Of a stretch of 64,000 nucleotides of DNA, positions 1,633 to 64,000 are shown piece by piece. How positions within the stretch are numbered: position 1 is the first letter of the stretch; the number at the start of each line of letters is the position of its first letter. The stretch comes from Haliotis rufescens. Taxonomy: Eukaryota. The translations under genes were made by a program, and so were the position numbers. The notes beneath the pieces are model-generated. The model was given only the letters and a program-made list of their open reading frames with translations. It ran no database searches and was not told the origin of the DNA. The DNA lies in contig NW_025963850.1 in assembly GCF_023055435.1 (NCBI RefSeq), positions 1 to 64,000 on the forward strand, read 5' to 3'.

Positions 1633-2725
1633 TCACTGCAGGATGTTGAGAATGTCCTCCCATTCGATCGTGCATCTCTCTTTACATGTCCATAGTGCTT
1701 TGACCAGGTCCAGATAGGTGGCCGAACTGCCATTCCACTGCTTCCATTTAGTGAGTATAATAAAGATCTGCATATACATTGAACATGGGTGTGCAACTCT
1801 GCCCTGTTGGATAGCCACAACGCTGAGCCCAAGTTCAATCCCGATATACTCAAATCCCATCCCGATATGTCTCGCAACAAGTCCGAGATCTCGTGGAGTT
1901 ACAGGAGTCTTCAGTCTCTCGTTCACACAGCGTTTTGAACCTACACAGAAATCTGTATTACTTGATGTAACACTAATTCTACCACAAAGGCTCACATAAA
2001 CAGGTTTCTTTCTGTTTTGTGTGATTGACATGTGGTATCGAATTAACCTTTATTCATCTCCAATGCTCATCGATATTCCAAATAAGCAATACAAATTGAC
2101 AGAAAAAGAAGTTGCACAAATCTTCCCATATACATATATGTCATCATAATAACGATCAAAATATGTTGAAAGTTATGCTGAACACATATGGCATATATTG
2201 CCAAATTTCTGAAATGAAATCATCAAATCATGATAAAGAATGTCGCACAAAATTATCAATTTAACGCACCTCTGCTTATGATCTGTTCGATCAGCTCGTT
2301 GCTTGACTGGTGCATTCTCTAGAACGAAAAACACACACAATCAATTGTGTGTCAAGATGACATGCTGTAGTATTTCCTGAAAGGCGTTGAACTCAAATAC
2401 AGTATTATTCTTCAGGTGGGATCAAACTTCCCCTCTATAACACTTAATATGGGATGATAAACTTCCACACAATAATACTGAATATGGAATGATAAACAGA
2501 GACAATGTCTGGCGGAACAGGAGTGAGTATATAAAGACTTTGAACCGTATGTTCGTTACCATATATCCACTATTAAGCATATATACAGAATGCCACACGT
2601 GTAGTGTTAAATGATGTGTACATATATTACTACCATTATTGCACCTTAATGAACATATCTAAAAGGGCGTTATTAAGACGTACCTGCCACTGAAGTCCGG
2701 AGAAGCACGAGGCAATGTTCCCCAT
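1633..2725 (-). CDS. DD1: N-acylation-signal, death-domain-only protein, subfamily A (132 aa, 3 exons)
   Basis: Exons 2725-2684 (MGNIASCFSGLQWQ, phase 0), 2318-2270 (RMHQSSNELIEQIISR+G, phase 1) and 1940-1633 (SKRCVNERLKTPVTPRDLGLVARHIGMGFEYIGIELGLS...WKQWNGSSATYLDLVKALW...NILQ*). All introns GT-AG; 399 nt in frame. The last exon matches the death-domain pattern (LA..IG..(W/F)..LG..LGLS..I......HP......LL.W....G..AT...L..AL). Confidence 0.85.
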
Positions 2726-3955
2726 GCTGCCTATTCATGTATGACACTGACGTACACCACTCTGTGTGTTCCAACTGGAATGACTAAATCAAAACCTCTA
2801 AGCTATATGTGAGCACAGCGGGACGCCCCGGCACGAGAGGGGACACAACGTCTCACGCTCTCTCGCAATAGCTTCAACCAAAGATTTCGGAATTTCGGAT
2901 TTTCGGATTTCAAAACTGATATAAAGGCGGAGTTTGGCAAAATGGTGTGTATGTGAAAGAGATTATAATATACCTATGTGGGGGTTATACCTCTTATCGT
3001 GCATTTTAAGTTTGTTGTCACACACTATGACCAACAATAATAAAGAAATAACATCACTGCAGTGTCGATAATTGACGTGTGGTCACAAAAGCAACATGCG
3101 GTTCAGTATGCCTCTTACACATGTAGATAAGAGAGCAGTGACAACTTCACTGAGATGCCTTTCTCCACTACGTCCAGCTGTTCAGTCAATAACCAAGCCA
3201 GCCCTTTCAAGGTGTCATGACTTATATGTTAGTCTTGCAACGAAGACAATAGACATGGAAATATTGCCACAAAAAGTAGTCTTTTAAAAAGGATAATAGG
3301 TCTCAATCTAAATAAGTTTCTAGAAATCATGACAATATCTGTGATAATGCAAGACAAAACTAAATACATGTTGTGTACAAAAGCTGTGGTACATTGTGGG
3401 TACTGGGTGACCTGGTCAACGTGTAGGATATATGTGGGCGTTATTTTGGCATTGATATGGAATACCGGCTAGCATAAATAGTTAGCGTGTTTAAGGAACA
3501 TATTGCTGTCTACAGATATTTTCTATATATTTTAGGCTTTGTAAACTGCAATCAGCAGCCTAAAAACTGAAAGAACAAGACCATAGCATGGATCAACACT
3601 TGATGTTAGACGTGTCAGCAATACGAAAATGTCCATGATTGGACTTTAATCATGATTGGATCTTCTTCAGCTGTAGTCAAGTCGTCCACACGGACAGACG
3701 GACACACTATCATACCTCTTCCAAATGTCCACTGCAAGGTCCACGTATCATGAATTTTGTTGACAATAATTTCACATACATTCTAATCGTTGACTTTCTA
3801 CGCCTTGTAAAACATCTTTCAAACGCAGGTAATGTGATGATCAACAACATTTCTATTAACAGTTCGTTCGTTACATCCATTTCAGTTTCCGGAATTTCAG
3901 ATTGCGAATGACAGAAGAACCCAATTAGTTATCACTTGCACATTCTTCCGCGTGA

Positions 3956-4106
3956 GGGGCGGTAGGGTAGTCCAGTGGTTATAATGTTCGCTCGTCACGC
4001 CTAAGACCCGGGTTCGAATCCTCACATGGGTTCAATGTGTGAAGCCCATTTCTGGTGCCCACCGCAGTGATATTGCTAAAATATTGCTAAAAGCCTTCAC
4101 TCATTC
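3956..4106 (+). mobile_element. tRNA-derived SINE (family 1)
   Basis: ggggcggtagggtagtccagtggtt (A-box-like)...gggttcgaatcc (B-box)...gaagcccatttctggtg. Homologous to 27269-27442, 38129-38290 and 56143-56308. Confidence 0.8.
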
Positions 4107-7614: not shown

Positions 7615-7900
7615 TTAAAAGCGGGAGTTTCCTCTGAATGTGATACGCACATGCAGGTACATGCCTTCGCAGTTCTTCTGCTTCCATTTGGTAGGCATGT
7701 GTACAACTTGCATATATAGTGAATATGGGTATGCAAACGTACCTCGTTCGATAACCACAAGAGTAAGTCCAGGTTCGATGCCGACAATCTCGAACCCGAT
7801 CCCGATGTGACTTGCAACAAGGCTGAGATCTCTGTCAGATACAGGGGTATCCAACATCTCTTCATTCACAGCATATGCTTGGTTCCAGTGTGTTGGCCCT
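7615..7900 (-). pseudogene. DD2: truncated death-domain exon (subfamily B), local duplicate of DD3
   Basis: Acceptor tatag|GGCCAACAC, then EEMLDTPVSDRDLSLVASHIGIGFEIVGIEPGLTL...MPTKWKQKN. Similarity ends near 7670. No exons 1-2 upstream. Flanks 6890-7625 duplicate 8035-8895. Confidence 0.8.
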
Positions 7901-9086
7901 ATAACAGTCATCTCACAATAAGCATACTCTTTACATGTGCGTGTGTTTTGTGTAATATATTGGCTTTCAAATTACCCATTAATATTCTAAATTATCTTAA
8001 CGTATCTAAAAGGGTATATTATTGAATACATATAATCGGATTTTCGAAACAACTAGATTTTTCACCACTACAAATCTGTTGCAATGGTGCATAGATATGA
8101 GTGCAGTCACAACTGTATTTACACATGTTTCGTCATTACGCCAATCTTTTCCACTATCCCTTTGTAGTCAGCATGCAAAAGCGTTCACATATTATCCTTC
8201 GATAGTTGTCTTAATGTTTTATGGTAAAAGTGTAAAGAACTGGACAGGATAACCATTTCCTTGTCTGTGACGGGTGCCACCAGTGGGACAGGATACCTTT
8301 TCGCGAACTTCATGGATCATCTCCATGTGATTTCATACCTGAGAACCACTACCGCCCATCACCAGTATTTGCAAACTTCAAACCAGGAAATATTCTTACA
8401 AATAGAATACAGCTACTACAGAAAGTAGAACACTAATTATCGCCCGTAATCAATCAGCAAGATTCTACGCCAACCCTTCTTAAATTGTTCAAAATAAGAG
8501 ACAACAGATAAACAGTACACTTCACAGACTGTTCAATCGTGCCCGGAGTCAAATCATTATGTGAGACGCATTTATGTCTCCGGATTTTGGAATTACGGAT
8601 GACGTTTACGACACATGTAATCATCCCTCGCTAGTTCTTCCTGAAATATCACAAGAGACAGAAAGACAAGTTATTACAAAAGGCATCACAGCTATTTATT
8701 AAAAGCATTTTTTCTCAACACATACAAACAGAATCACAATGTATTACAAACGGAAAAGATATTACTGTTTAAATGAAGAGTGTTCAGTGTGCAACTTGAG
8801 GAAACAGAAAATCATTCCGATCAGTCAGGATCCCAAATTATGTAAATAAGCCTCAGTGAACCTAGCATCTCGACTCGATATTTCAAAGCGGGAACCCAAT
8901 CAATCAATGATAACTGTACATGAGGAGAGTGTTCGGTGTACTGCTCGTATATGAGAGAACTCAAATTTAGGCATGATTTCTCTGTATGTGGTCGGGGAAA
9001 CTCAGTGAAGCATTACTTATATACCCACTCATGTATTCACAGCGTAAAGCAAGACAGCGTCATGTGAAAACAGCTCTCCGACTTGA

Positions 9087-10232
9087 TTACACAGACACAG
9101 TGGACGGTCCCTGAAGGATGTTGAGAATGTCCTCCCACTCAATGGCACACATGTCATTGCAACTCCACAGTGCTCTGACGAGGACCAGGCTGGTTGCAGT
9201 TCTCCCGTTCTTCTTCTTCCACTTTGTAAGCATGTGCACAACCTGCATGTACAGTGAATAAGGGTGTGCAAACGTGACTTGTTCGATAACCACGAGAGTA
9301 AGTCCAAGTTCGATGCCAACAGACTCGAACCCGATCCCGATGTGACTTGCAACAAGGCTGAGATCTTGTTCAGATACAGGAGTATCCAACATCTCTTCAT
9401 TTACAGCATATGCATGGTTCCAGTGTGTTGGCCCTACAACATTAAACTCACAATAAACTACCTATTTACTTGTGTTCATTTTGTTTGATAGATGATGTAA
9501 CAACATTCGGTTCGCTTTCATTAATCCAAATTATTTCACTAAACAAAGAAAAATACGATACATACATACAGTAATTTAAAAAGAAATTAATGGGGTACAC
9601 ATAGAACTAAACTTCCTAAAATAGAATTATAAGACAAACAGATTGTTTAAATAAAGAACTAAAGGATGACTATGCTTGTCATAAGAGGCGACTAGCGGGA
9701 TCGGGTGGTCAGGCTCGCTGACATGGTTGATGCATGTTATTGTATCCCAATTGCGTAAATCGATACTCATGATGTCAATCAGTGGATTGTCTGGTGCAGA
9801 TTCGATTATTTACAGACCACCGTCATATAGCTGGAATATTGCTGCGTGCGACGTTAAACAAAAAACAAGCAAACCAAATAACAAACAATTTAATTTAACG
9901 TACATGTAACTCTCTCTGTCAGATTGGGTTCATTTTGGCAGTTTATCGAGTTCTCTGTGTTGGACAGCCTCTGGAATCGAATAAACACAGTTTCAAACAC
10001 GATTGATAGCTACGCCATCACAGCAATAAAACAATAAGGATAATCTTACATAAACTAAACAAGACAATGCAATGACAAATTCACGTGAACATGTACACAC
10101 GCATTACACATATTGACACGCTAAAGTTCGAATAGGGAAAGCATGTGAAATATGCCTATATACATATGTATACATAACATCTTGACCCACCTGATATCGG
10201 GATATTGGCCAGCATGAAACAATATTACCCAT
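9087..10232 (-). CDS. DD3: N-acylation-signal, death-domain-only protein, subfamily B (151 aa, 3 exons)
   Basis: Exons 10232-10191 (MGNIVSCWPISRYQ), 9970-9904 (RLSNTENSINCQNEPNLTERVT+T) and 9433-9087 (PTHWNHAYAVNEEMLDTPVSEQDLSLVASHIGIGFESVGIELGLT...WKKKNGRTATSLVLVRALW...). GT-AG; 456 nt in frame. Confidence 0.82.
9665..9880 (+). mobile_element. SINE-like interspersed repeat (family 3) in DD3 intron 2
   Basis: aagaggcgacta.cgggatcgggtggtcaggctcgctgac...tggattgtctggt.caga.tcgattatttacagacc...gctggaatattgctg. Homologs at 21582-21760 (+) and 28520-28740 (-). Absent from the paralogous DD7 intron. Confidence 0.7.
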
Positions 10233-10318
10233 GCTGTCTGTAATTATGCCTCTACTTCACACATGTGTATCCCACAGCCAGCCGACACAATCTGATAGTT
10301 TCGACTGTACTGACGGGC

Positions 10319-10351
10319 TTTATATATCGGACTAGCATAAGGGGATTCCCC
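10319..10351 (-). promoter_or_regulatory. TATA box + NF-kB (kB) site of DD3
   Basis: TATATAAA on the minus strand at 10326-10319. GGGGATTCCCC at 10341-10351, about 110 bp upstream of the ATG. Confidence 0.7.
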
Positions 10352-16085: not shown

Positions 16086-16240
16086 NNNNNNNNNNNNNNN
16101 NNNNNNNNNNNNNNNNNNNNNNNNNNNNNNNNNNNNNNNNNNNNNNNNNNNNNNNNNNNNNNNNNNNNNNNNNNNNNNNNNNNNNNNNNNNNNNNNNNNN
16201 NNNNNNNNNNNNNNNNNNNNNNNNNNNNNNNNNNNNNNNN
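16086..16240. other. Assembly gap (155 N)
   Basis: Run of n. Confidence 1.
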
Positions 16241-16504
16241 ATAGTAAAGTATAAATAGGTTCGTGGGGAACCCCATGCCATTTTGATTCATCCGGTATGG
16301 GTGTCAGCAGGCTTCTAGCTGTCGCTCTCCATGTTCCAGTGTTAAGAGGGGAGTGTTTGTAATTTTCTTTAATATTCAAAATCGGAAGATGCCTATTTTC
16401 ATACGAATGGACTATTGAAAAACATGCATTTCATTTGATTAAATATTATGGTTTCAAGAATAGTGTCAACTCGTAAGGGAGTTGAGAAAAAAAACCAATA
16501 CAAG

Positions 16505-16790
16505 GTTTGTGTAGTGCCGTCCACCCTTCCTTGTCCTCATCTGCAACACTTGCGCCACTCTTGATCACACGTGCGGCTACAGATTCATGTCCATTCTGAC
16601 AAATTATATATAGTGCCGTCCGTCCGTTCTCATTAAAAGCTGTAACACTAGCGCAACTCTTGATCACAAGTGCGGCTACTTATTAATGTCCATTCTGACA
16701 AATTATATGCACTGCCGTCCGTCCGTCCGTTCTCATTAACAGCTGTAACACTTGCGCCACTCTTGATCACAAGTGCGGCTACAGATTAGA
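16505..16790 (-). pseudogene. Degenerate inverted fragment (about 3 units) of the gene A-type ankyrin array
   Basis: The minus strand reads ...IKSCASVTAFNENGRTALYIICQNGHESVAARVIKSGASVADEDKEGWTALHK, the same 99-bp unit as 30590-33120. It has a 4-nt ggac slippage and a stop in the first unit. Confidence 0.85.
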
Positions 16791-19430: not shown

Positions 19431-19472
19431 CTGATACCGACATCCAGGCCAACATCGAAGAGTATTTCCCAT
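19431..19472 (-). pseudogene. DD4: orphan first exon of the DD family (no DD exon found downstream)
   Basis: ATG...CAG|gtaggt, 42 nt, MGNTLRCWPGCRYQ; same length and phase as exon 1 of the other DD genes. Candidate exon 2 at 18857-18811 (RIDTEPVNHIQERQT) ends in phase 2, unlike the paralogs. Confidence 0.6.
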
Positions 19473-19592
19473 TTTAAATGTATACACTATGACTGCATCT
19501 ACTCCTGATATGGAAAATGTTGATCGCTTATAAAGCTGGAGATCTGGAATGACACAGACTGTGCACTAGCGTACTACTTATAGCGGTTAGAA

Positions 19593-19603
19593 GGGGATTC
19601 CCC
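19593..19603. promoter_or_regulatory. kB site upstream of DD4 exon 1, between DD4 and gene A
   Basis: GGGGATTCCCC within the near-palindrome gaaggggattccccttc. Confidence 0.65.
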
Positions 19604-21185: not shown

Positions 21186-24100
21186 ATGGATAGGGGGGAC
21201 AGAGAGGTGATAGCTCCGTACTTCACGGGGAAGAACAAGGCACTGAAGCTCACTGAAGTGTTGGAAATACTGGAGAACCCTGATGATACACGGGCTATAG
21301 TAACACCCCCTGCTCAACCCCATGGAGGAGACGGGTACTTGTACAGGGTGGAGGCAGACTCGGCGGAAGGTAGGTTAAAGAGTGCATGTCTTGAAGTTTT
21401 AACATTAATAAAAATGCATAATCTGATGAGTATTAATAAAGGGAGGATTAATAATGGAATAAGACAGTATTAATGAAACACTAAATTTGATTATTTATGT
21501 TGTGGGATGTGGTGTGATGGGGTCGTATGGGTGGGTATTGGGAGCAAGTAGCAGGTGTCAAATAGTCAAAGGAGCCACAGACCAGTGAAGATCCGGGGAA
21601 GAATTTATAGGTCTTCAGCAACACCTGTTTGCCGTAAAAGGTGACAATACTTGTAGTAAGAGGCGACTAACGGGATCGGGTGGTCAGGCTCACTGACTTG
21701 GTTGATGCATGTCGTCAATCCCAATTGCGTGTATCGAGGCTCATGATATCAATCACTGGAACAAAAACAAACACACAAAAGACGGAGTGGCATTTGGAAG
21801 GAGGGTAGTCATTGTTTCTAAAATAGTCCTGGGCTCGAATCTCAGATTTGTCTTTTATGTGATTCTAGGCTTGTAAACGTCGATGACCTATGAAGATCTA
21901 CGCCACTTTACGCCACTACTCCACTTTACCAAATGTTACTTTACTCATGCTTTAGCCTTCACAATGTAGAGATGAATAGCGACCTACTAGACCCACTGAT
22001 CCCTATGAACAATACAAATATAGTTGACTAAACGTTCACATACTAGTATGCTGTGATCGCGATCGTGATATCAGTTATATTTACACACACGTAAGGTTTA
22101 AATATAACCCGCTATTGACACAGTCAACACGTATATATGGAATGACAGCTCATCGCTCGCACTTCGTGGCAATGAGCCGGATCTTGCAAGGGAATATACG
22201 TACTCGTGTTACCTGTAATGAAAAAAACGTTCCCGACTGCAACTCGTAAATAGCACCCCGATCTGAGGCCATGCAACGCACTACCAAGCTCTTTGTATTG
22301 ATTCAGGTTGCAGATCAATGCACGTAGCTAGGCAGTGATAATGAAAACATTTTACGCTAAAAAGCATTGGCAGTTTCTCTTTCCAAACGCTACTTTTGAT
22401 GCAGAAAAACAAAACAACTAAAGAATTGCACTTAAAGAACATACGATGAAGTTGATTGTCAATGTATTGATTGGGCCGAAAGCTATGCAAATATTCACTA
22501 AGAAAGTTTGATTGCATGTGCGGTACTGATCAGGTAGCAGATGCACTATAAATCCCTTGTACATAATATTGTGGCAACATTATTTAACATTTTGTGATAT
22601 TTGTTACATTGTTTCATATTTACAAGTTTCAATTTATTCATAAATTAGAACGTGTTCTTGTCATCTTTGGTCTGAAGAAAGCCACCTTGAATTTAAATGT
22701 AAACTCACTTACAATTTGTGTCGACTTAGAACCTCTTAAATTTGGATTTAGACTGTTTGCCGTGAACAACGTTACATCCAGATTCGTCATTAGTTGACAC
22801 TGTCTATAACCTTCACATTGTGTCCTTAATAATAGTTCGTTATTGATCATTCTGTTTGATGGTGGACGTGGATGTAGGCTTGATTCTGTGTTTATATTAA
22901 ATTATGTTCATTGCAGCAGATACCAACTATAAACCAGGAAACATTGAATCAACTAACGCGAATTTTAGGGGGAAAACATGATCGAATCTGTATGTATATT
23001 ATATGAATTATTTTTATTGCAGCAGATCCCAAATATATAACTCAAATATATATCCCAAATATATAACCGAAACTAACACCTAACCGACCGAAATGACGTC
23101 TTGTAATCATTAAGTTAAGTTATTATTGCTCTACAGATTCCTGGGAAAATGACAACTACTACTTCAAGCACAATGGTTCTCGTGAACAGCCTAAACCTTC
23201 ACCCAAGGTTCTCAAGCAGGACTTCGTGGCTTATAAAAGTGATGGCACCACCACCGAGGCTTTTAAACGACAGGCATACAACTTGCTCGAGGGAGACGTG
23301 AAATATATATTAGTACACTACATTGGGAAATGCACAGTAGCATTATCCGATCCAAAATATGAGAAGCGTTTGAATACAGCCCTCCACCATGAATCCCAGA
23401 TAGTGAACAGTTACGCGATAATAGCTGGTTCTGGAGATGAAGATGGTGGAGATTGGGAGACCAGGGATATGGAATGTGATCATGATCGTGCAAATACTAA
23501 CTCTCCTACTTTCCTGGCTTCCTTAGATGAAGTTAGCTCAAGGAAAAGGACACATGACCCTGATATGGTAAATCGTGTGAAAACTCCTAAACGTTCAGAA
23601 AACGAACAAGTAATTGAAAACAATTTGATAGACATCATAACCACCGAAAGTGTTAGTCATCAACATGATGAAAGACCGACCAACCTCAAGTCACTCACCG
23701 AATGTTTGCTGAACAAACGTACTCATATCGTTATCGCAAGACGTGTGTTGAAGCAGGCAAAATACTGGGAGAAAAGCACCAGATTTCCTACCTTTGACAG
23801 TCCATGTTTATCATTAATCGCTGACATCGACTGTAAATGGAGAAATGACCTCACAGAAGTCAGTGACAGGTTGAAGTGGTCACGACTTAGCCCGGATGTT
23901 CTCGGCGAAGACCAGTGCAAGGATACGTATCACAGACTGGTATCTGCTGTCATAGTAGGTGCATATCACATGAAGACGGACATCACAGAGTTTGTTGACA
24001 CCCTCTATATGTACCCATCACATGTGATGGGTGACAACGCCTTAACAGATGACGACGATGGGACGGATCCTCAGATGTGCAAGGTGGGGCCCCACAACAT

Positions 24101-41969: not shown

Positions 41970-42624
41970 TAACTGCAGGATGTTGAGAATGTTCTCCCAT
42001 TCGATCTCCCTTTACTTTTCCAGAGTTCATTGACCAGGACCATATAGGTGGCTGAACTGCCATTACACTGAACATCCATTTAGTGAGCATAATCAAGATC
42101 TGCATATACATTGAACATGGGTGTGCAACTCTGCCCTGTTGGACAGCCACAATGCTTAGCCCAAGTTCAGTCCCGATAGACTCAAATCCCCTCCCAATAT
42201 GTCTCGCAACAAGTCCGAGATCTCGTGGAGTTACAGGAGTCTTAAGTCTCTCGTTCACACGGCGTGTTGAACCTACACACAAATCTGTATTACGTGATGT
42301 AGCACCAATTCTACCACAAAGGCTCACATAAACAGGTTTCTTTCTGTTTTACAATATCTCAAATACTCATCAATATTCTTAATAAGCATTACAAAATAAA
42401 ACAATCGAAATTGGCCTATGTCCTCCCATATTCATTTATGTCATCATAATAATGAGTAAAATATGTTAATAGTTACACTGAACACATTTGATACTAGTAT
42501 ATTACAAAATTCCTGAAATGAAATTATCAAATTATAATAAAAGAAATTCTCACAAAATTCTCAATTTAATGTGGGGATTTAACACACCTCTCCTTATGAT
42601 CTGCTTGATCCAGTACTCGATCAG
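41970..42624 (-). pseudogene. DD5: 5'-truncated, frameshifted subfamily A DD gene
   Basis: DD exon 42272 to about 41970 with a frameshift after MLTKW, a small deletion and a lost stop. Only the 3' half of exon 2 remains (about 42588-42624). Exon 1 is replaced by the next duplicated unit. Confidence 0.8.
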
Positions 42625-44237: not shown

Positions 44238-45133
44238 TCACTGCAGGATGTTGAGAATGTTCTCCCATTCGATCGTGCATCTCTCTTTACATGTCCATAG
44301 TGCTTTGACCAGGTCCAGATAGGTGGCCGAACTGCCATTCCTCTGCTTCCATTTAGTGAGCATAATCAAGATCTGCATATACATTGAACATGGGTGTGCA
44401 ACTCTACCCTGTTGGATAGCCACAATGCTGAGCCCAAGTTCAATCCCGACATGCTCAAAGCCGATCCCGATATGTCTCGCTACAAGTCCGAGATCTCGTG
44501 GAGTTACAGGAGTCTTCAGTCTCTCGTTCACACGGCGTGTTGAACCTACACACAAATCTGTATTACGTGACGTAACGCCAAAATCATCACATATAAACAG
44601 GTTCTGTTTATTGTGTGACTGATATGTGATATCGAATTAACGTATCTCAAATACTGATCGATAATCATCATTACAAAATGACAGAAAATGAAACCGTGTA
44701 TATCCTCTGATATACGTATATGTCGTCAAATAATGACCACAAAGTTGATAGTAATACTGAACAAATGGGATATATAACCAAATTTCTGAAATCATTTTTT
44801 TTCAAATTGAGACGTACAACGTCTTACACAATTATCTTTTTAAAATGGGAATTTAACGCACCTCTCCCTATGTTCTGATGGATGCAATACTCGATCAGCT
44901 CGTTGTTCGACTGGTGCATTCTCTAGAACGAAAAGCACACAATATCACGTTGGTCAATAATTCTGTTACCGTATATCCACTTTTAACCACACAAAATGCA
45001 CTAAGCTGAGGATTGAATGTTGTGTACATGTTATATTACTGCTAGCTTAAGTGTATAAACATCTTCATAGAAGAAAGTTATTAAGACGTACCTGATACTG
45101 AAGTCCTGAGAAGCACGAGACTAGATTCCCCAT
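44238..45133 (-). CDS. DD6: N-acylation-signal, death-domain-only protein, subfamily A (136 aa, 3 exons)
   Basis: Exons 45133-45092 (MGNLVSCFSGLQYQ), 44922-44862 (RMHQSNNELIEYCIHQNIGR+G) and 44545-44238 (STRRVNERLKTPVTPRDLGLVARHIG...NILQ*). GT-AG; 411 nt. Confidence 0.85.
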
Positions 45134-45231
45134 GTTGTCTGTATCTAACCTTATATGACGCCGAAGTGCACTACTCTGTTTGTTGATCCTACCTGACTGA
45201 ATCAAGACCTCTCAGCTACATGTGAGCAATA

Positions 45232-45242
45232 GGGGAATCCCC
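45232..45242. promoter_or_regulatory. kB site of DD6
   Basis: GGGGAATCCCC about 100 bp upstream of the ATG. Confidence 0.7.
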
Positions 45243-48012: not shown

Positions 48013-48943
48013 TTACCCAGACGTAGATGCTGGTGACAGTAGGATGTTGAGAATGTCCTCCCACTCAATGGTACAGCTGTCATTGCATCTCCACAATGCT
48101 CTGACAAGGACCAGTCCGGTGGCAGATCTTCCGTTCTTCTCCTTCCACTTGGTAAGCATGTGTACAACCTGCAAGTACAGTGAACATGGATGCGCAAACG
48201 TGACTTGTTCGATAACCACGAGAGTAAGTCCAAGTTCGATGCCAACAGACTCGAACCCGATCCCGATGTGACTTGCAGCAAGGCTGAGATCTCGTCCAGA
48301 TACAGGAGTATCCAACATCTCGTCATTTACAGCATATGCTTGGTTCGGGTGTCTTGGCCCTACAACATTAAACTCACAATAAACTACCTATTTACTTGTG
48401 TACATTGTGTTTGATAGATGTAACAACACTCAGTTCACTTTCATTATTCTAAATTAGCCTCACTAAACAAAAACAAAAAATACGACACGTCCATGAATTC
48501 ATCCACTCATCCATATGGTAATGTGGAAAAAATGATTGTGGTACTCATAGAGCTATACTTCCTCAAATATTATAAGACAAACAGATCGTTTCAATTCAAT
48601 GAAACTAAAAAAATGAAACAATGTGTTCCAACGTACCTCTCTCTGCCGGGTCGCGTTTATAATGACATTTTATCGAGTTCCCTGTGGTGGTCAGTCTCTG
48701 GAATCGAATAAACACAGTTTTAAACACGATTGATAGCTACACTATCATAGCAATAGATCATCTTACATAAACTAAACTAAACAAAACAATGCAATAACAA
48801 ATGCACGTGTACACACGCCGACGCGCATTATAAACATTGATACGTTAACGTGCGAATCGGGAAAGAACGTGAAATAAGCCTGTGGCTGTATATATACCCA
48901 CCTGATATCGGAATCTTGACCAGCATGAAACATTATTACCCAT
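48013..48943 (-). CDS. DD7: N-acylation-signal, death-domain-only protein, subfamily B (149 aa, 3 exons)
   Basis: Exons 48943-48902 (MGNNVSCWSRFRYQ), 48697-48637 (RLTTTGNSIKCHYKRDPAER+G) and 48359-48013 (PRHPNQAYAVNDEMLDTPVSGRDLSLAASHIG...). GT-AG; 450 nt. Confidence 0.85.
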
Positions 48944-49029
48944 ACTGTGAGTATCTATGCTTCTACTTCACACACGTGTATCCTACAGCCAGCTGACACA
49001 GTCTGATACTGTCGACGGTTCTGACAATC

Positions 49030-49062
49030 TTTATATATTGTAGTAGCGTAAGGGGATTCCCC
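49030..49062 (-). promoter_or_regulatory. TATA box + kB site of DD7
   Basis: TATATAAA (minus) at 49037-49030; GGGGATTCCCC at 49052-49062. Confidence 0.7.
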
Positions 49063-52000: not shown

Positions 52001-52171
52001 GAAAAATCCCCCGATAGGTGTGATAACTATATATATTTGCTATACATGAAGGCAAATCACATAGCCACTTTTACCTCGACACATCTGATCGCTGTACAGG
52101 AGGGGTGATATCGATATCAAAATATCATGATTCCACCATTTATTGAATGTATATTATTACTGAGATTACAG

Positions 52172-52809
52172 TGACTGCAGGATGTTGAGAATGTCTTCCC
52201 ATTCAATCGTGCATCTCTCTTTACATGTCCAGAGTGCTTTGACCAGGACCAGATAGGTGGCCGAACTGACATTCCACTGCTTCCATTTCGTGAGCATGGG
52301 TGTGCAACTCTGCCCTGTTGAATAGCCACAACGCTGAGCCCAAATTCAATCTCGACATACTCAAAGCCGATCCCGATATGTCTCGCAACAAGGCCGAGAT
52401 CTCGTCTAGTCACTGAAGTCTTGAGTTTTCCGTCATCACAGTGTGCTGAACCTATATGACAAATACAAGAGACACAAAATGTTATTTAACGGCTGTAATT
52501 AGATGTAAGATTATAATATTAGTTCCCGAGAGCTGTTATTCTGACAAAACAGTTTAAGAGAAAAAATAACTGAAATGATAACATGGGCATGGGAAGCTAA
52601 AACATAGTACAGTAAAACAGTTAAAGAGAAATACAGGAAACCACAGGGGACAATCATGTATCAGCTTTACATATAGAGCATAGAGGACGCGCATAAACAC
52701 TGATGAACAGTGTCACGCTGACATTCATTAATTGTTGGGAAAATACGTGAAGGGAATCTTAACCTACCTGATATCTGAATCTTGACCAGTATGAAACAAT
52801 ATTACCCAT
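52172..52809 (-). pseudogene. DD8: chimeric DD pseudogene
   Basis: Exon 1 at 52809-52768 is MGNIVSYWSRFRYQ (subfamily B type, Cys to Tyr). DD exon from 52451 is subfamily A type, with a frameshifting deletion after VAHPC. No exon 2 recognised. Confidence 0.75.
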
Positions 52810-52916
52810 GCTGCCTGTATCTACGACGTCTCGTGAGAAAATGAAACACACATGTGTATCCCTCAGTCGCCGCGACAACTGTGCACAACTACTTTTAACA
52901 CCTATGAATAGGGAAA

Positions 52917-52927
52917 GGGGATTCCCC
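52917..52927. promoter_or_regulatory. kB site of DD8
   Basis: GGGGATTCCCC about 108 bp upstream of the ATG. Confidence 0.65.
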
Positions 52928-57591: not shown

Positions 57592-57644
57592 CTTCACATG
57601 TATCACGGATGTGTGACTCATGGGTATATTAATAACTTTACAAC

Positions 57645-60600
57645 ATGGCGTCCCATTTGAAACCACCCGAGCCTTACCTTACAGGGAGAACGTCAGCCCT
57701 TAAAGTGGAGGCGATTGTTAACATTCTGAAGAGTCCAGATGAGAGCAAGACCATCCAGACTGCCCCCGCCACACCCCAGGGAGGGGAGGTGTACCTCTAT
57801 AAGATAACCTCGGGAATGAGAGAAGGTGAGGCAGTTGTGTTCAGGCTTAATATTACCATGAGTCAGGGATTACTACATATTAACAATGTTAATATTTAAT
57901 GGAAAGCTGATATTATTTATTACACAATTTGAATTCATTGGGGATGTTAAGCACACATGACCAATGTCCTCAAAGCCACATTCATATACATGTACGTTAT
58001 TAGTAATAGTCTGCTTGACGTCGGGGTCACCCTGCCCTGGTATCAGCTTCCTTGTACAGCCCTGTGATAACCGGTTTTTTGTTTGCTAATATTGTTGACA
58101 AGTGATTGTCGTGCACAAAGTGACTACATGAATTAAAAATATTTGTCTGTATCATTGTTAAAACGACTTCTTTTGCAATATTTTCTATCTATGTTTTTCT
58201 TTTCACTCTTTCCAACCCCCTTTACAACAATTGTGTACTTAAATAATGAACATTGTTTGATGTCAACTTGTAAAAAATCCATTGTTGGATTAATCAATAT
58301 GGGCTAAACAAGAATCAAGTATCGTGTTGCATCTCAGGTAAGGAAAAAAGGACATGGTATTTATCATCACAACCTCAAATACAACATGTTTATGCATGAC
58401 CTAACAGCTGATTTGGCATTAAGGTGGGTTGATTTTAGAGTTATGTTACACTATTGACTGTTCACAGTTTTATTAATTAATCAACATCACAGGTGACACA
58501 CTAACACATACAGCTTTTTGAGGGATAGTTCATCTTCAGGATTACAACATTGTTTGCAGTGTTATGATGTTAATTTCTATTTGCAGATATCTGGAAGGAT
58601 GACAAATATCACTTCCGAAGTGATGGAACCCGGAAGCAGCCTGGCTCAAGTCCAGTCATAGTGAAGCAGTACCACAAGGCTTACACCGAGGACAAGACGA
58701 CAACAAGGGCCTTTGTCAGAGAAGCTTCGTATCTGTACAACCACCCTCTGAAACACGTTCTAGTGCAATATATCGGGGACCACACACAAGCACAGCCTTT
58801 TTCTCAACGAAAGAAGCGTGGTCAACAGACACTTCATTCCCCAGGTGACAGTAAATGTAGGAAAGTAGAATCAACTGGTGGAGCTGTGCAGTCGGGGGTC
58901 ATGGAGAACACTAACTCCAACCTGGACCCTGAAGATCATTCATCACCGACAGAATTGGAAGACAATGTTAAATCAAACACTATTCTAGGTGTAACACTGA
59001 ACGAAGCAAAGGTGTCAGAGACTGAAACAAAGAATGATCACGACACAAATCAAAAACGCAGCAGGACAGGTGATCATAGAGGTGATGATGACATTGATTA
59101 TTTGGGTACAACGTCAGGCTCCCCTGTCAAGAAAGCCCGTTGGCAGCCTCAACTTGAAAATGACAACACAATTGTAACCTGTGTCACAAACACACACTAT
59201 GCTTATCTGTACACATTTCTAGAAGATGTAGAAAGGAATCGGGATGTGATAAGGGTCGTGCGACAAGTCCTAGCATTATCTAGGTTCTGGAACAAGGACT
59301 GTACCAACAAAGGCAATCCGTGCTTGTCACTCATTGAAGAGGTCGACAAGAACTGGAATCTAGATGCAATTAAAGCAAGGAACTGGGTTAAATGTTCTGT
59401 AAATACTGACGTGCTGAGCTTGAACCAAGACAAGTCAGTTTACATAAAGCTCATCGCAGCAGTACTTGTTGGAGCATGCCATACCAGGACTGAAGTACAG
59501 GACTTTGTGAAAACACTGAAGGATCCTCCTTCACACCTGCAGCATGTACAAGAGGACGTCCCCCTGTCACGTGACTGTACATACACAGTTGGCTGCTACA
59601 CCATCAGAGGAAATGTTCTGTCTCGCCTGGAAACCAACGAGTGGCTGACAGATGAAGTAAGTAGTCCACCTGCAATATTTACACAATCACACAAACTACA
59701 TGCCTAGTTAACCATCCAAGAAAATCATTTCATAGAGCATGGGAGGCTTTCGATTTCATCAAATGATGTTAGTATTAGATATAAACTGGGGGCGTGAGGG
59801 TGGTGAGTTGTTCAGTCACCTAATACTCATTGATAGTGCCTTGAGGTAGGCGAGCTAGAGCTTGAGTTTGGTTAAACGCCTCTTTTTGACAGTAGTGTCA
59901 TGGTGCGTTGGATTAAATTATGAAGAAAGTAATGCACATCTTTGACGTTAACCACTTTGTTGATTCCCATGGTGAATCTGCATAGCGAAATGCGGCGCCT
60001 TGGACCACTGAGACCCCATCTTCAGATTAATACAGCAACTTTTGGCGGTTTCTACTTTTTACACCAGTATTAGTTAACTATCAATTCATATAATGGTGCT
60101 AATTATCAACTCATTGCCATGCATCTCGATTCTGCAATGATGGCACTACTCACCTGCAATGGGCATTGTTCACAAAATCTAGTACATCACCAGTCAAATT
60201 GTCAGTCATTGCTATCAGCCGAGATATTCTCTTCATGATGAATATGTGATGTGCAGCGGATCCTGCTTTGATTTGAAATTACAAGCGTTCCTTTTGAAGC
60301 AAACGCATTGGGCGATTAAACAGTATAATAAACATTCTAATAAATGAACTCTTTCCTGTCCAGATCATGGACACATACCTGCACCTCCTGGAAGGGGGAG
60401 TGGTGTTCCCGTGTAGGCTTCCACTGTCTGGTGCTGCCTACAGAGACAATCCTACTGTGGGAGGCAGGACAGTACACAGACAGAATAAGGGGGAAAGATG
60501 TGAGTGACGTGAGATTTTTATATTTCTTATAATTCTGTCATTCCGAGTGTACCATTGCATGTCCACCCTACCATGAACATGGGCAAGACTCAAAAGATAT

Positions 60601-63600
60601 TTTGCAGTAATTGTATATTTTTTGTGATAACATATGATTCGTCTATGCCATGATTGCGTATTCAGTATGCTAGAAGTTGTCACTTGCAATTGTGCGCACG
60701 AAGCGACCATATGCTGCAATGGGTTTCAATTGAGTCAAAGCCAGTAACCCCATTGATCATAATGCTATTCGTTTTCAATATGCAGTTACAAAAGCAGATA
60801 TTGCACATGAACATATTCGTCTTGCTACATATTATTTTATGAATTGAAAATCTGGTTGTCAGAGAGGGGTCTTTAGAATTTCTTAGTTCCAAGTTCATGA
60901 TACCAATTCACTATTATCTCTGTTACTGCATCATATCCATCTTATGTGAAGCACGTGTTTCTGGATATATTGATCGTACACCGGAAAGGCATTTGTTGTG
61001 AACTTTCAGGAAAATTTGACAAACTACACGTGGATCTTAATGCCAGTGAACATGCCACGTAATCAACATTGGGTGCTACTGGTGGCTAATGTCAAGGATG
61101 GAACAGTGGGCGTGGTTAATTCTAAACCCTCCTTAATTGTGGAGGACAAGGTTGTACAACACTGGAGGTAGGTGGACAGAACAGTGGGCGTGGTCAATTC
61201 TAAACCCGCCTTATATGTAGAACACCCATTTGTACAACACTAGAGGTAGATACAAAAAAAAGAGGACGTGTGGCTGCACATTATAAATGTTAAAACCAAG
61301 CTATCCAATTTGAAATGTTGAAATGTTGATTTCTCAAAAACAAACATGAATGTAAATAAGATCCATCGAAAAATGTTCGATACACCCACATTTGTAGCTT
61401 TTACTTTTGGGTAGAAGATATAGAACAACTTGTTCACAGGGTTACCCAGTTCCCCAAATGGGTACACTGTGTGAATGATTTAAACGCCATAAATACAGTT
61501 ATGTCACTCATTCATTTAAACCATAACATCTGTATTTGCTAACATAAAACCTAATTATGGACAAAGCAGGAGAGAACATCAGAAATGCCAGGACCGGATA
61601 TTTTAGGCACTGCTGTATTTACCTTCTGTTCTACCTTTACTTTAGCACCAGTCCACATGAGTTGAAGACTTTATTGCCATCGAGTAATATACATGTATTC
61701 CTCAGGCTCTTTGTAAATCACTTGAAATCTACGTCTAAGGAAAGGAGCAAGTCATGGATGAAGAAACAGTACCCAGTGATAGAACAGTCTGATGGACACA
61801 GCTGTGGGATATTCGTTCTGATGGTAGGTTGGTTTGAAGCTATGTTTTTGATATGAAAGGCAACATGTGTCTCAATAACCACGTATGAAAGATACCTTTT
61901 CATTTCTAACTTTCATATTCTCAGGCTGCTGATGCAATTTTGGCGGAGAAGTCTCCAGGCATCATGAGGAACTGTCACGTTGAGAAAAACAGGCTGTATG
62001 TGCTTCAGAGGATACTACAGTATGCCAAGGACAAGGGAGATATGCAAGGTGGAGGAAATCACATGATGGCAGTTGGTGGACAGGGTAATGTCACAAACGA
62101 AATTCAAACTGTAACGCTGGAGACAAGAGATGTACTGGAAAATAGCTGTACAATGACAACAGAACAAGGAGGTCCAACTATTCATGAAGAGGATGGACAT
62201 GAAACACATGAAGGACCCGACTGTGCTATGGCCAGTGATGAAAGTATGCATTCTGGAGATCATTACTATGTTTCGTAATTGTAAGTCGTTACGCAAGGTA
62301 TTATATTTTAGATCTACATGTGCAATGTTGTACACTGCTTTCTAACAACCGCTATTTGTTTTCACAGATACAGAGGACTATCCATGTTTGGATCAGCACC
62401 TGTTGCATAAGCAGGAGAGGGCGTGCTTGTTAGTGGTTGCTTTGGCGGAGAATAACCTGGAGGAGAGGATGCTATGGGCAGGGTCTGACACAGGGACTCG
62501 CGTCGAAAGAGAAACCTACAAAAAATATATTGTTTGGGCAGTTAAGGCTTTTGACATCAATGAAGAAGAATACACTGAAAATATGATGAAACCTATTTTA
62601 TCCCAATTGGCGGGATGCTGTCTCCATCATGAAGCAGGCTCATATAGAATAAGAAATCATAAAGTAGCAATAAAGCTAAGAGAAATACTGCTACGTGATG
62701 TTAGGCAGTTGGTTGAAAGGATGGATCTCGAGTTCATATATCGTTATGTGACATTTAGAGATGATCCAACTGAAGAGGAACAACTAAATGTGTCTTTCAA
62801 CCTCGAATTGAAACATGATGATCTGCATATTGTAGCGAAGAGGTTTGCTACAGCTTTACACGGCAGAAAGTTTGCCTTTGTGTGCATGCATTCCCTATTC
62901 CAGGTAGAGACATTTGTTGATATGGTTTGGGAGAAATTGTTGCATAATATGAACAAGGACAGTTCTGTACTGTTGAAAGTATTGTCAAATAATGACATTG
63001 TACATGGATATTCCTTTCTGTTTTGGGCGAGCATCACAGACAACTCACATTTGTTGAGGAGAGCATTGTTCAGTGTTCATTTGAATGCAGAGAACAGAAA
63101 GGAAGCTTTGTTTGGAAGTTGCTTTGGGAATAGTTTAGCCAACTTCGATTACTTGTTTTCCAATAAAAACTGGAAGTTGGATAAGTTGTGGATGACACTA
63201 CCCAAACTCCCAAGACCTCTCATCATTAAACTGCAGTTGGCAGTTGCAGATGATCTGAGAGTAAAGTTTGGTAAATGTTCACTTTTGGACATTGCCTGTG
63301 TGGGTGGGTTGTCTGCAGTGGCTTCCAGATTGTCACATTTGATGAAGACGAGCAAGAAGAAAAACAAGTCAAGAAAGAATACATATGTACATGTTGCATC
63401 CTTGTGCCTAAAGGGCAAAGATACCATGGATACAATTACAAAAATTGGAAAACTGAATGTCAATATAAAAGGCCCTGAAGGATCAACACCTTTACATTAC
63501 GCATGTGCAGTTGGAAATGTTAGCATTGTAAGCTATCTGTTACAGGAAGTAGTGGACATTGGTGAGCAAAACAAGAAGGGTGAAACTGGGCTTCATTTGG

Positions 63601-64000
63601 CATGTATATATGGAAATGCAGAAGTTGTTACAATGTTATTACAGAACAAGGGAATAATTCATGTGAAAGATAATGCTGGCCTCACACCTCTACATCGTGC
63701 AGCCTGGCAGGGACATCGGGTGGTTGTGGAGGTGTTATTACAGAACAAGACCAATGTGGATGAGAAACGTAATGATGGCAGCACACCTCTACATCATGCA
63801 GCCTACCAGGGACATCGGGAGATTGTGGAGTTGTTATTACAGAACAAGGCAAATGTGGATGAGAAAGATAAGGAAGGCAGCACACCTCTACATGATGCAG
63901 CCTACCAGGGACATAGGGAGGTTGTGGAGGTGTTATTACAGAACAAGGCAAATGTGGATGAGAAAGATAAGGAAGGCAGCACACCTCTACATCTTGCAGC
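57645..64000 (+). CDS. Gene B: paralog of gene A (CG-1-like + C48 peptidase + helical region + ankyrin repeats); 1-nt frameshift in exon 3; runs off the window end
   Basis: Exons 57645-57825, 58587-59656, 60364-60499 (136 nt, one base too many), 61010-61167, 61706-61823, 61925 to an uncertain phase-1 donor (about 62084 or 62243), and 62368 to beyond 64000 (open; missed by the ORF track because there is no stop). Motifs WLTDE|IMDTYL, NQHWVLL, VVNS and QSDGHSCGIF. ANK units GSTPLHxAAYQGHREVVEVLLQNKANVDEKDKE. Confidence 0.72.

What the first reader, a model, noticed from the sequence alone, without database searches (positions are those of the whole stretch)
1633..64000. Repeated two-part locus: lipid-anchor death-domain genes head-to-head with a protease-ankyrin sensor gene
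Seen: the same arrangement occurs twice, [DD1, DD2, DD3, DD4 on minus | gene A on plus] and [DD5, DD6, DD7, DD8 on minus | gene B on plus]. The nearest DD first exons are about 1.7 kb and 4.8 kb from the protease-gene ATGs. Known: variable repeat sensors genetically linked to effector or adaptor genes are typical of fungal NLR/HET loci, paired plant NLRs and protease-gasdermin clusters. Inference: this may be an undescribed invertebrate innate-immune system. The ANK array would sense a ligand, the CE-clan protease would relay the signal, and NF-kB-inducible membrane-anchored DD proteins would act as adaptors, decoys or substrates. The functional link is a hypothesis based only on repeated linkage.
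Basis: partly seen in the sequence, partly recalled or inferred. Interest (0 to 1): 0.9.

Follow-up and report, generated by a model that had tools for sequence, protein, structure and literature searches.

The report
Abalone death-domain / protease-ankyrin gene array
This red abalone window is a slice of a megabase-scale array in which clusters of small death-domain genes with NF-kB-type promoter sites alternate with giant CG-1/Ulp1-protease/ankyrin genes; the two families also sit together at three other loci, which makes them an undescribed candidate two-part immune module whose function is untested.

Summary
The arrangement is real and much larger than reported. The genome is Haliotis rufescens. 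The window holds 7 death-domain (DD) exons on the minus strand: 4 intact, 1 truncated variant and 2 frameshifted. It also holds an orphan DD first exon, so there are not 8 complete DD genes. Two plus-strand genes encode CG-1 + C48 (Ulp1/SENP-like) + ankyrin array. Genome-wide, at least 150 DD exons (all minus) alternate with 37 such genes (all plus) on three partly redundant contigs.

The DD fold, the three-exon gene model starting MGNxxSC (an acylation motif) and a conserved palindromic kB site about 100-120 nt upstream of the ATG are all confirmed.

Three loci outside the array also carry family DDs 9-38 kb 5' of a family gene (chance about 4e-9), and the DD and gene trees agree. Five dispersed gene copies show no family DD: two on local inspection of their flanks, three only from capped genome hit lists.

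Within the window the DD clusters are young copies (dS 0.05-0.19), whereas genes A and B are ancient paralogues (dS saturated). Recombination between DD clusters could therefore produce the alternation neutrally.

The functional link remains inferred: the complex prediction gave no answer and cross-species synteny could not be tested. Other first readers noted the same module on other pieces of this genome.

The parts
1633..2725 (-). DD1 gene: exon 1 2684-2725 (MGNIASCFSGLQWQ), exon 2 2270-2318, DD exon 1633-1940. Intact, 132 aa. Its kB site is degenerate (GGGGCGTCCC).
   Evidence: NCBI model P0001 (100% identical, starts at the exon-2 Met).
7618..7971 (-). DD2: DD exon truncated after about helix 4 by a roughly 314-bp deletion relative to DD3. 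No first exon of its own was found in the window.
   Evidence: The same truncated form is annotated as P0048.
9087..10351 (-). DD3 gene: kB palindrome 10341-10351, exon 1 10191-10232 (MGNIVSCWPISRYQ), exon 2 about 9910-9970, DD exon 9087 to about 9433. Intact.
16086..16787 (-). Assembly gap (16086-16240) followed by a decayed, inverted ankyrin-repeat fragment (16500-16787) with stops and frameshifts. Not part of any gene model.
19431..19603 (-). Orphan DD promoter and first exon ('DD4'): kB palindrome 19593-19603 and exon 1 19431-19472 (MGNTLRCWPGCRYQ|GT). No DD exon downstream. Lies 1.7 kb from the gene A ATG.
   Evidence: The same element sits upstream of A-type genes on C6.
21186..33139 (+). 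Gene A, CG-1 + C48 + ankyrin. Exon 1 21186 to about 21386. Exon 2 about 23133-24152. C48 exons 24703-24834, 25876-26034 (HW...NS) and 26660-26791 (QSDGHSCG). Possible exon 28015-28233. Ankyrin exon about 30101-33139 (about 28 near-identical 33-aa repeats).
   Evidence: Architecture confirmed in paralogues P0002 and P0038.
41917..42609 (-). DD5: DD exon with two frameshifts plus an exon-2 remnant (42586-42609). Pseudogene.
44238..45242 (-). DD6 gene: kB palindrome 45232-45242, exon 1 45092-45133 (MGNLVSCFSGLQYQ), exon 2 44862-44922, DD exon 44238 to about 44545. Intact.
48013..49062 (-). DD7 gene: kB palindrome 49052-49062, TATA-like box, exon 1 48902-48943 (MGNNVSCWSRFRYQ), exon 2 48637-48697, DD exon 48013-48359. 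Intact. The exon 2-3 GT..AG junction is seen in a contig of a run only guessed to be RNA (17 mismatches over 519 bases, so possibly a paralogue or an orthologue in another species).
   Evidence: (X10 record 14, skips 277, CT..AC = GT..AG on the minus strand)
52120..52927 (-). DD8: kB palindrome 52917-52927, exon 1 52768-52809 (MGNIVSYWSRFRYQ), DD exon 52120-52485 with a mid-domain frameshift. Lies 4.8 kb from the gene B ATG.
57636..64000 (+). Gene B, CG-1 + C48 + helical region + ankyrin; runs off the window. Exon 1 about 57657-57824. Exon 2 58586-59659. Further exons about 60362-60529, 61010-61168, 61704-61829, 61925-62245 and 62367-64000+.
   Evidence: P0042 is this window's own partial model; P0040 is a full 1167-aa paralogue

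Best explanation
The window is part of a Haliotis-restricted, megabase-scale gene array built from two co-inherited gene families.

Family 1: small three-exon genes encoding DD-only proteins. They consist of a 14-aa exon starting MGNxxSC (a predicted N-myristoylation/palmitoylation motif), a short hypervariable linker exon and a death domain. A conserved palindromic Rel/NF-kB site next to a TATA-like box sits about 100-120 nt upstream of the ATG.

Family 2: large genes encoding an N-terminal CG-1 domain, a Ulp1/SENP-like C48 cysteine-protease domain and a very long ankyrin array built of near-identical repeats that differ at a few positions.

The two families have stayed neighbours, with the DD genes on the 5' side of the big gene, since the deepest split in both families. 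The most likely reading is therefore a two-component, inducible innate-immune or cell-death signalling module. In it the ankyrin/protease protein is the variable recognition and enzymatic part, and the DD proteins are NF-kB-induced, membrane-tethered DD adaptors or decoys.

Shown here: the gene structures, the domains, the promoter motif, purifying selection on the DD, and linkage with co-phylogeny.
Inferred only: acylation, kB inducibility, an immune role, and any direct interaction or cleavage between the two products.
For: - Species and models: P0001 is 100% identical to a Haliotis rufescens protein.
- DD identity: a profile of the DD exons hits solved DDs (ankyrin-3 1.5e-9, CRADD 6e-8, RIPK1, PIDD, FADD). 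The AlphaFold model's top 22 Foldseek hits (ranks 1-17, 21 and 22 of the printed list) are all death domains (RAIDD, TM 0.80), and residues 1-35 are disordered.
- Three-exon MGN... models exist in 4 Haliotis species.
- An exon 2-3 splice junction appears in a contig of a run guessed to be RNA.
- kB motif: GGGRNWYYCC gives 28 matches against 2.5 expected. The exact palindrome lies 99-121 nt upstream of 5 of 6 first exons and is a conserved island in a 56%-identical promoter alignment. Genome-wide, kB-N(85-115)-ATGGGNAAY gives 53 hits against 0 for the control; 47 are in the array, all on the DD strand, and 2 are at the C605 DD locus.
- DD dN/dS is about 0.2 at dS about 1.1.
- Gene architecture: CG-1 + C48 + ANK in P0002, P0005, P0006 and P0013; C48 + ANK in P0008. 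The C48 domain aligns to SENP1/Ulp1, and His, Gln and Cys are invariant family-wide.
- Array: at least 150 DD exons (all minus) and 37 exon-2 copies (all plus) alternate perfectly.
- Independent linkage at C27, C594:5.33 Mb and C594:21.86 Mb. About 0.003 such co-localisations are expected by chance, and 3 are observed.
- Trees: both families split into the same two deep clades, and (C27, C594:5.33) are sisters in both (gene 99/98, DD 90/89).
Against: - No expression, interaction or activity data exist. The complex prediction gave no answer.
- Five dispersed family genes show no family DD. C594:21.37 Mb was checked over -37/+27 kb and C594:13.64 Mb over -15/+12 kb. For C24, C545 and C594:13.23 Mb this rests only on capped hit lists.
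- Two DD loci (C605, C1) lack a family gene.
- In this window the DD copy nearest each big gene is defective.
- The DD clusters of the two units are young copies (dS 0.05-0.19, flanks 80-85% identical), while genes A and B have saturated dS. The alternation inside the array can therefore be a by-product of unequal crossing-over between DD clusters.
- All linked loci could be passive block duplications.
- The catalytic Asp of SENP1 aligns with Asn in most members, so activity is not assured.
- One of the six first exons (GNTLRC) fails the myristoylation pattern, as do two of the orthologue models (GNIVLC, GNIQFC).
Confidence: 0.42

Rival explanations
1. The neighbourhood is structural, not functional. 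The two families are independent (each may still be immune-related). They alternate only because the array grows by non-allelic recombination between the similar DD clusters, and the dispersed linked loci are passively inherited block duplications.
For: The DD clusters flanking ancient paralogues A and B are near-identical copies (DD1/DD6 dS 0.05, DD3/DD7 dS 0.19, flanks 80-85%), whereas A versus B dS is saturated. Five gene copies and two DD loci exist unpaired. The nearest DD copies are broken. No interaction signal was found (uninformative).
Against: Linkage has survived since the deepest split of both families at four loci, despite changes of orientation and spacing (head-to-head at C27, same strand at C594:5.33 Mb, mixed at C594:21.86 Mb). 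The DDs are always on the 5' side of the gene.
Confidence: 0.4
2. The DD-only proteins are decoy inhibitors, like the primate CARD-only and PYD-only proteins. On this reading they arose from an ankyrin-type or CRADD-type DD and damp DD signalosomes as NF-kB-induced negative feedback, with no specific relation to the neighbouring protease-ankyrin gene.
For: The architecture is DD-only. A kB site sits in the promoter. The closest solved relatives are the ankyrin and CRADD DDs. The copies are numerous and turn over rapidly, with pseudogenes among them.
Against: This does not explain the repeated linkage and co-phylogeny with one particular gene family. The acylation motif points to a membrane location rather than a soluble decoy.
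Confidence: 0.12
3. The big genes are transposon-derived or selfish elements (Ulp1-like proteases are common in DNA transposons), and the array is a repeat expansion without host function.
For: C48 domains occur in several transposon superfamilies (own knowledge). A MULE transposase fragment lies at 35592-35891. Copy number is high.
Against: The genes have a conserved multi-exon structure with spliceosomal introns. Catalytic motifs are invariant across deeply diverged paralogues. Orthologues exist in four species. No transposase or terminal repeats belong to the unit. All copies sit in one orientation at a few loci rather than dispersed.
Confidence: 0.04

Closest known systems
Head-to-head paired plant NLRs (e.g. 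RRS1/RPS4, RGA4/RGA5) and fungal NLR/HET loci
   Same: A variable repeat-containing 'sensor-like' gene is genetically paired, often divergently, with a partner gene. The pairs are duplicated together, and the clusters are lineage-specific and expanded.
   Different: No NB-ARC/NACHT NTPase was detected. The partner is a DD-only protein, not a second NLR. No functional data exist.
CARD-only / PYD-only decoy proteins next to caspase-1 and NLRP/AIM2 genes in primates
   Same: Small death-fold-only genes are clustered beside a large signalling gene and turn over quickly (own knowledge).
   Different: Here the domain is a DD with an N-terminal acylation motif and a kB promoter. The neighbouring gene carries no death-fold domain from which the DD could have been copied.
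Canonical ankyrins (ANK repeats + ZU5-UPA + DD) and CRADD/RAIDD
   Same: The DD is closest in sequence and fold to the ankyrin-G and CRADD DDs. NCBI auto-names are 'CRADD-like' and 'ankyrin-3-like'.
   Different: The DD proteins have no CARD and no ZU5/UPA. The ANK array and the DD are on separate, opposite-strand genes.
CAMTA transcription factors (CG-1 + TIG + ANK + IQ)
   Same: An N-terminal CG-1 domain is followed by ankyrin repeats.
   Different: No TIG or IQ was detected. A C48 protease domain is inserted, and the ANK array is 10-70 times longer.
SENP/Ulp1 SUMO proteases (peptidase family C48)
   Same: The Pfam C48 domain scores above its cut-off in paralogues. The domain aligns to SENP1 with the His, Gln and Cys motifs conserved.
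   Different: The triad Asp is Asn in most members. The domain is fused to CG-1 and a giant ANK array. The substrate is unknown.
TRAM/TICAM2 (N-myristoylated TIR adaptor) and dually acylated Src-family N-termini
   Same: A short N-terminal MG...(S/C) acylation motif tethers a small signalling module to the membrane (own knowledge; motif seen).
   Different: The module here is a death domain, and acylation is only predicted.

Membership tests
Death domain (PF00531, death-fold superfamily) | Sequence profile match to known DDs | tested here: met
   Pfam scores are 25.4 and 28.7 bits (cut-off 22.6) for two exons; two others fall just below. The family profile against PDB gives ankyrin-3 DD 1.5e-9 and CRADD 6e-8.
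Death domain (PF00531, death-fold superfamily) | Six-helix bundle fold | tested here: met
   In the AlphaFold model of P0043 the DD core has pLDDT about 80-94, with one low-confidence loop at 85-89. The top 22 Foldseek PDB hits are all DDs, the best being RAIDD at TM 0.80.
Death domain (PF00531, death-fold superfamily) | Homotypic DD-DD assembly | not testable with these tools
   Needs biochemistry.
Peptidase C48 (Ulp1/SENP) | Pfam PF02902 above the gathering score | tested here: met
   36-63 bits (cut-off 20.7) in P0002, P0005, P0006, P0008, P0013 and P0030. The window's own exons match colinear parts of the profile.
Peptidase C48 (Ulp1/SENP) | Catalytic His-Asp-Cys triad plus oxyanion Gln | tested here: inconclusive
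   The His (HW), Gln and Cys (Q..D..SCG) motifs are invariant, but SENP1 Asp550 aligns with Asn in all members examined except P0013, which has Asp.
Peptidase C48 (Ulp1/SENP) | Ubl-deconjugating or endopeptidase activity | not testable with these tools
   Needs an enzyme assay.
CAMTA transcription factors | CG-1 domain | tested here: met
   30.9 bits (cut-off 23.5) in P0002 and 25.0 in P0006. The window's own exons match only weakly, at E 0.003-0.011.
CAMTA transcription factors | TIG domain and IQ motifs | tested here: not met
   No TIG or IQ hit in any Pfam scan. The genes are therefore not CAMTAs.
NLR / STAND sensors (paired NLR analogy) | NACHT/NB-ARC P-loop NTPase | tested here: not met
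   No NTPase family appears in the Pfam scans. The helical region before the ANK array in gene B folds as a weakly ANK-like alpha-solenoid. The Atlas lead to fungal WHD-ANK proteins scores below 0.9.
NLR / STAND sensors (paired NLR analogy) | Divergently paired partner gene retained through duplications | tested here: met
N-myristoylated / dually acylated proteins | Met-Gly start fitting G-{EDRKHPFYW}-x(2)-[STAGCN]-{P}, with a nearby Cys | tested here: met
   5 of 6 first exons in the window fit the pattern, and 5 of 6 have Cys at position 7 (DD8 has Tyr). Orthologue models start MGN.... Actual acylation was not tested.
Rel/NF-kB target promoters | Consensus kB site GGGRNWYYCC in the proximal promoter | tested here: met
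   The exact palindrome GGGGAATCCCC lies 99-121 nt upstream of the ATG in 5 of 6 copies. It gives 28 matches against 2.5 expected in the window and 53 against 0 (control) genome-wide in this configuration.
Rel/NF-kB target promoters | Induction by Rel factors or immune challenge | not testable with these tools

The most novel reading that the evidence does not exclude
A previously unknown kind of animal innate-immune module. A cytosolic giant protein combines a hypervariable ankyrin recognition array, a Ulp1-like protease and a CG-1 DNA-binding domain. It works with genetically paired, NF-kB-induced, lipid-anchored DD-only proteins. One possibility is that it cuts their hypervariable linker, which ends in an invariant Gly at the exon 2/3 junction, and so releases the DD from the membrane to seed or block a death-domain signalosome. 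Pair specificity would be maintained by co-duplication.
Probability: 0.12. Interest if true: 0.9.

Novelty: new variant of a known kind. Interest (0 to 1): 0.66.

Why it matters
Molluscs lack adaptive immunity and rely on lineage-specific expansions, most of them uncharacterised. Here two undescribed families are involved: all members are 'uncharacterized' or auto-named in NCBI, and none of the five literature searches returned a paper describing either family. Together they form one of the largest gene arrays in the abalone genome. The array carries clear regulatory and targeting signatures: a kB site, an acylation motif, a retained catalytic motif and variable ANK positions. The two families are also co-inherited.

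If the module is functional, it would be a new way of wiring a repeat-based sensor to death-domain signalling without an NLR NTPase. It would also be a candidate locus for disease resistance in farmed and endangered abalones. The hypothesis can be tested directly with reporter, acylation, co-IP and protease assays, and with existing chromosome-level Haliotis assemblies.

Tried and rejected
- Complex prediction with P0038 (residues 200-1011: C48 + ANK) and P0001 (DD1) scored 0.00 and gave no answer. It counts neither for nor against binding.
The flanks of C24:35.97 Mb, C545 and C594:13.23 Mb were therefore not inspected directly. Their lack of a DD rests on hit lists that are capped at 150 scored candidates.
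- RNA evidence: no run on record as RNA held the stretch. The contigs laid on it are only guessed to be RNA. One shows a spliced DD junction, but another covers the intron, so genomic DNA may be present.
- The search for a DD exon for 'DD4' in 10.3-19.4 kb was negative.
- The search for a Rosetta-stone fusion (a DD inside any fetched CG-1/C48/ANK protein) found none.
- STAND NTPase in gene B's helical region: there is no Pfam hit. The Atlas lead is below 0.9. Foldseek gives only weak ANK-like matches at TM 0.2-0.3.
- Literature: five searches, including the LOC identifiers, found nothing on these families. PMC11463336 covers lophotrochozoan CRADD but not these genes.
- My first frame reading of DD7 wrongly suggested a frameshift. 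It was corrected by placing the acceptor at 48359.
- A brute-force exon enumerator gave unreliable exon 2/3 boundaries. Boundaries for DD3 and DD6 are therefore set by homology.
Full-length statements rest on database paralogues.

Full report
**Identity of the DNA.** The DD1 open frame is 100% identical to Haliotis rufescens LOC125381047, which lies on a 241,659-base contig. That contig is the window's own contig, C72. The assembly has 1.33 Gb in 615 contigs.

**Check of the observation: DD genes.**
- tblastn and a family HMM find seven DD exons, all on the minus strand: 1636-2049, 7618-7971, 9090-9461, 41917-42348, 44241-44636, 48016-48387 and 52120-52485.
- Four are intact (DD1, DD3, DD6, DD7).
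- DD2 lacks the last third of the domain because of a roughly 314-bp deletion relative to DD3. The same truncated form is annotated elsewhere as P0048.
- DD5 and DD8 are frameshifted.
- Six first exons of 42 nt, each followed by a GT donor, encode MGN(I/L/N/T)x(S/R)(C/Y).... They lie at 2684-2725, 10191-10232, 19431-19472, 45092-45133, 48902-48943 and 52768-52809.
- The stated distances of 1.7 and 4.8 kb are correct. In both units, however, the DD copy nearest the big gene is defective.

**The assembly gap.** The gap at 16086-16240 lies in a non-coding stretch next to a decayed, inverted ankyrin fragment at 16500-16787. Nothing claimed here crosses it. It was neither filled nor looked up.

**DD gene model.**
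- In DD1, exon 1 (phase 0), exon 2 (2270-2318, RMHQSSNELIEQIISR) and the DD exon are in frame and give 132 aa.
- NCBI's P0001 starts at the exon-2 Met.
- NCBI models in H. cracherodii (P0043, P0047, named 'CRADD-like'), H. rubra (P0045) and H. rufescens (P0048) start MGN and have the same three parts. The H. asinina model (P0046) carries the MGN motif internally, and the H. rufescens model P0044 starts in the linker.
- A contig from a run only guessed to be RNA joins 48637|48359 with GT..AG on the minus strand, which is the DD7 exon 2-3 junction. It differs from the window at 17 of 519 bases, so it may come from a paralogue or from another species.
- With that junction DD7 is in frame.
- Five of the six first exons fit the PROSITE myristoylation pattern, and five of six have Cys at position 7 (DD8 has Tyr). 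Acylation is a prediction only.

**DD identity.**
- Pfam scores straddle the cut-off.
- A profile of the family hits solved DDs: ankyrin-3 1.5e-9, CRADD 6e-8, then RIPK1, PIDD, FADD and TRADD.
- An AlphaFold model of P0043 has a confident helical core and a disordered N-terminal 35 residues. Its 22 best PDB matches are all death domains, the best being RAIDD at TM 0.80.
- Between the two DD subtypes, dN/dS is about 0.2 at dS about 1.1, which indicates purifying selection.

**Promoter.**
- GGGRNWYYCC occurs 28 times against 2.5 expected by chance.
- The exact palindrome GGGGAATCCCC lies 99-121 nt upstream of the ATG in 5 of 6 first exons. DD1 has a degenerate copy.
- It is an invariant island in an alignment that is otherwise 56% identical, and DD3 and DD7 have a TATA-like box about 20 nt downstream.
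- Genome-wide, the configuration kB-N(85-115)-ATGGGNAAY gives 53 hits against 0 for the reversed control. Of these, 47 lie in the array contigs, all on the DD strand, and 2 lie at the C605 DD locus.
- That this 11-mer is a canonical Rel/NF-kB site is my own knowledge. Inducibility is untested.

**The big genes.**
- Exon-level Pfam hits to Peptidase_C48 are colinear with the profile, and the last exons are ankyrin arrays.
- Paralogue models give the exon map and the architecture. CG-1 + C48 + ANK is seen in P0002, P0005, P0006 and P0013, and C48 + ANK in P0008. Protein lengths range from 1,233 to 4,108 aa.
- The C48 domain aligns to human SENP1 and yeast Ulp1.
- The His (HW), Gln and Cys (Q..D..SCG) motifs are invariant across the family. 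The triad Asp is Asn in all members examined except P0013.
- Gene A's array consists of about 28 near-identical 33-aa repeats. Twenty-two were sampled: they are 92% identical at the DNA level, and variation is concentrated at repeat positions 1, 3, 5, 9, 10 and 13.
- Gene B's region before the ANK array has no Pfam family. It folds as a weakly ANK-like solenoid. No STAND NTPase was found.
- Every family member in the databases comes from Haliotis. Outside the genus only the CG-1 domain finds relatives.

**Scale of the array.**
The exon-2 copies number 6 on C72, 22 on C6 and 9 at C594:41.6-41.9 Mb.
- Every interval between consecutive big genes contains 1-6 DD exons.
- The three contigs overlap in content, probably as haplotigs or structural variants, so these counts are upper bounds.

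**Is the linkage more than one tandem duplication?**
- Outside the array the gene family has eight loci and the DD family five or six.
- Three coincide:
  - C27: gene on the minus strand with exon 2 at 162153-163928, and a DD on the plus strand at 178344 (head-to-head).
  - C594:5.33 Mb: gene on the minus strand, and two DDs on the minus strand 9-10 kb upstream.
  - C594:21.86 Mb: gene on the plus strand, and five DDs 16-38 kb upstream.
- With 6 DD loci and a window of 40 kb either side in 1.33 Gb, about 0.003 coincidences are expected for 8 genes (Poisson P about 4e-9, my calculation).
- In all four places the DDs lie on the 5' side of the gene.
- The trees agree. Both families split into the same two deep clades (array type against dispersed type, 100/99-100 support). 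(C27, C594:5.33) are sisters in both trees (gene 99/98, DD 90/89), with C594:21.9 outside them.
- With only four linked units this congruence is supportive but not strong.
- Unpaired copies also exist. C594:21.37 Mb, a 76%-identical copy of gene A, has no DD within -37/+27 kb, and C594:13.64 Mb has none within -15/+12 kb. C24, C545 and C594:13.23 Mb show none in the hit lists. The DDs at C605 and C1 have no family gene nearby.

**A caution from divergence levels.** Within the window the two DD clusters are recent copies of each other. DD1/DD6 have dS 0.05, DD3/DD7 have dS 0.19, and the flanks are 80-85% identical. Genes A and B are ancient paralogues: 31-40% identical in amino acids in exons 1-2, with dS saturated. 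So the 'same arrangement twice' is not a simple duplication of a two-gene block. Either the DD clusters are homogenised, or they are themselves the recombination substrate by which the array expands. The second case would give perfect alternation without any functional coupling.

**Interpretation.** The gene structures, domains, promoter motif, selection and co-inheritance are shown. An immune or cell-death role and a functional pairing are inferred from four things: the domain types, the kB site, the acylation motif with a disordered tether, and linkage retained through the deepest split of both families. I put 0.42 on a functional two-component module and 0.40 on a purely structural neighbourhood of two independent families. 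The remainder goes to a decoy-only reading (0.12) and a selfish-element reading (0.04). The complex prediction returned no answer and is not evidence either way.

**Limits.**
Cross-species synteny and some flanks could therefore not be examined.
- No run on record as RNA held the stretch.
- Other first readers noted the same module on other pieces of this genome. Those notes are unchecked and were not used as evidence.

Noticed in passing
window 16500-16787 (-), next to the gap at 16086-16240: A decayed fragment of about three ankyrin repeats, 81-85% identical to gene A's repeats, lies in inverted orientation and carries stops and frameshifts. It is either a relic of rearrangement or an assembly problem at the gap.
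   Followed up: partly
window 35592-35891 (-): An ORF with a weak match to the C-terminal end of the MULE transposase domain (E 0.0066) lies between gene A and the next DD cluster.
   Followed up: no
window 45200-46000: Contig depth is very high in all four runs laid, including other organisms' runs. This indicates an abundant interspersed repeat just upstream of the DD6 promoter.
   Followed up: no
window 2860-2900, 10400-10450, 49110-49160, 52980-53029 (alignment A2, columns 35-95): Tandem GAAATCC/GAAAATCC-like motifs lie about 60-100 nt upstream of the kB palindrome in several DD promoters. They may be additional factor sites.
   Followed up: no
window 1636-1923 vs 44241-44528: The DD exons of DD1 and DD6 are about 96% identical, while their introns and flanks are about 85% identical. 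This suggests either gene conversion or constraint on the exon.
   Followed up: partly
L020:6344-6958 (G000:C27:178344-178958), C27:180293-180522, 183375-183497: The C27 DD gene carries a tandemly reiterated copy of the last roughly 31 residues of the death domain. Further copies lie 2-5 kb downstream.
   Followed up: no
G000:C594:13634835-13634845 (L014:5835-5845): The same GGGGAATCCCC palindrome lies about 260 bp downstream of exon 1 of a dispersed family gene that has no DD neighbour. No MGN exon is nearby.
   Followed up: partly
contigs C72, C6, C594:41.58-41.93 Mb: Many hits have identical scores at constant offsets. C72:150-241 kb matches C6:935-1026 kb, C72:0-90 kb matches C6:343-435 kb, and C6:0-257 kb matches C594:41.66-41.92 Mb. 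C6:204-229 kb also repeats at C6:794-819 kb. The array is partly represented more than once, or is structurally polymorphic.
   Followed up: partly
exon 2/3 junction of the DD genes (e.g. window 1940/2270 and 48359/48637): The linker exon is hypervariable in sequence and length (16-20 aa), but the split codon at its end always encodes Gly and is usually preceded by Arg (..RG|S/P/T/Q..).
   Followed up: no
window 5254-5565, 15154-15450, 63634-64000: Low-complexity runs are present: poly-G/GT, (CT)n, and 99-bp ankyrin repeat units at the window end.
   Followed up: no
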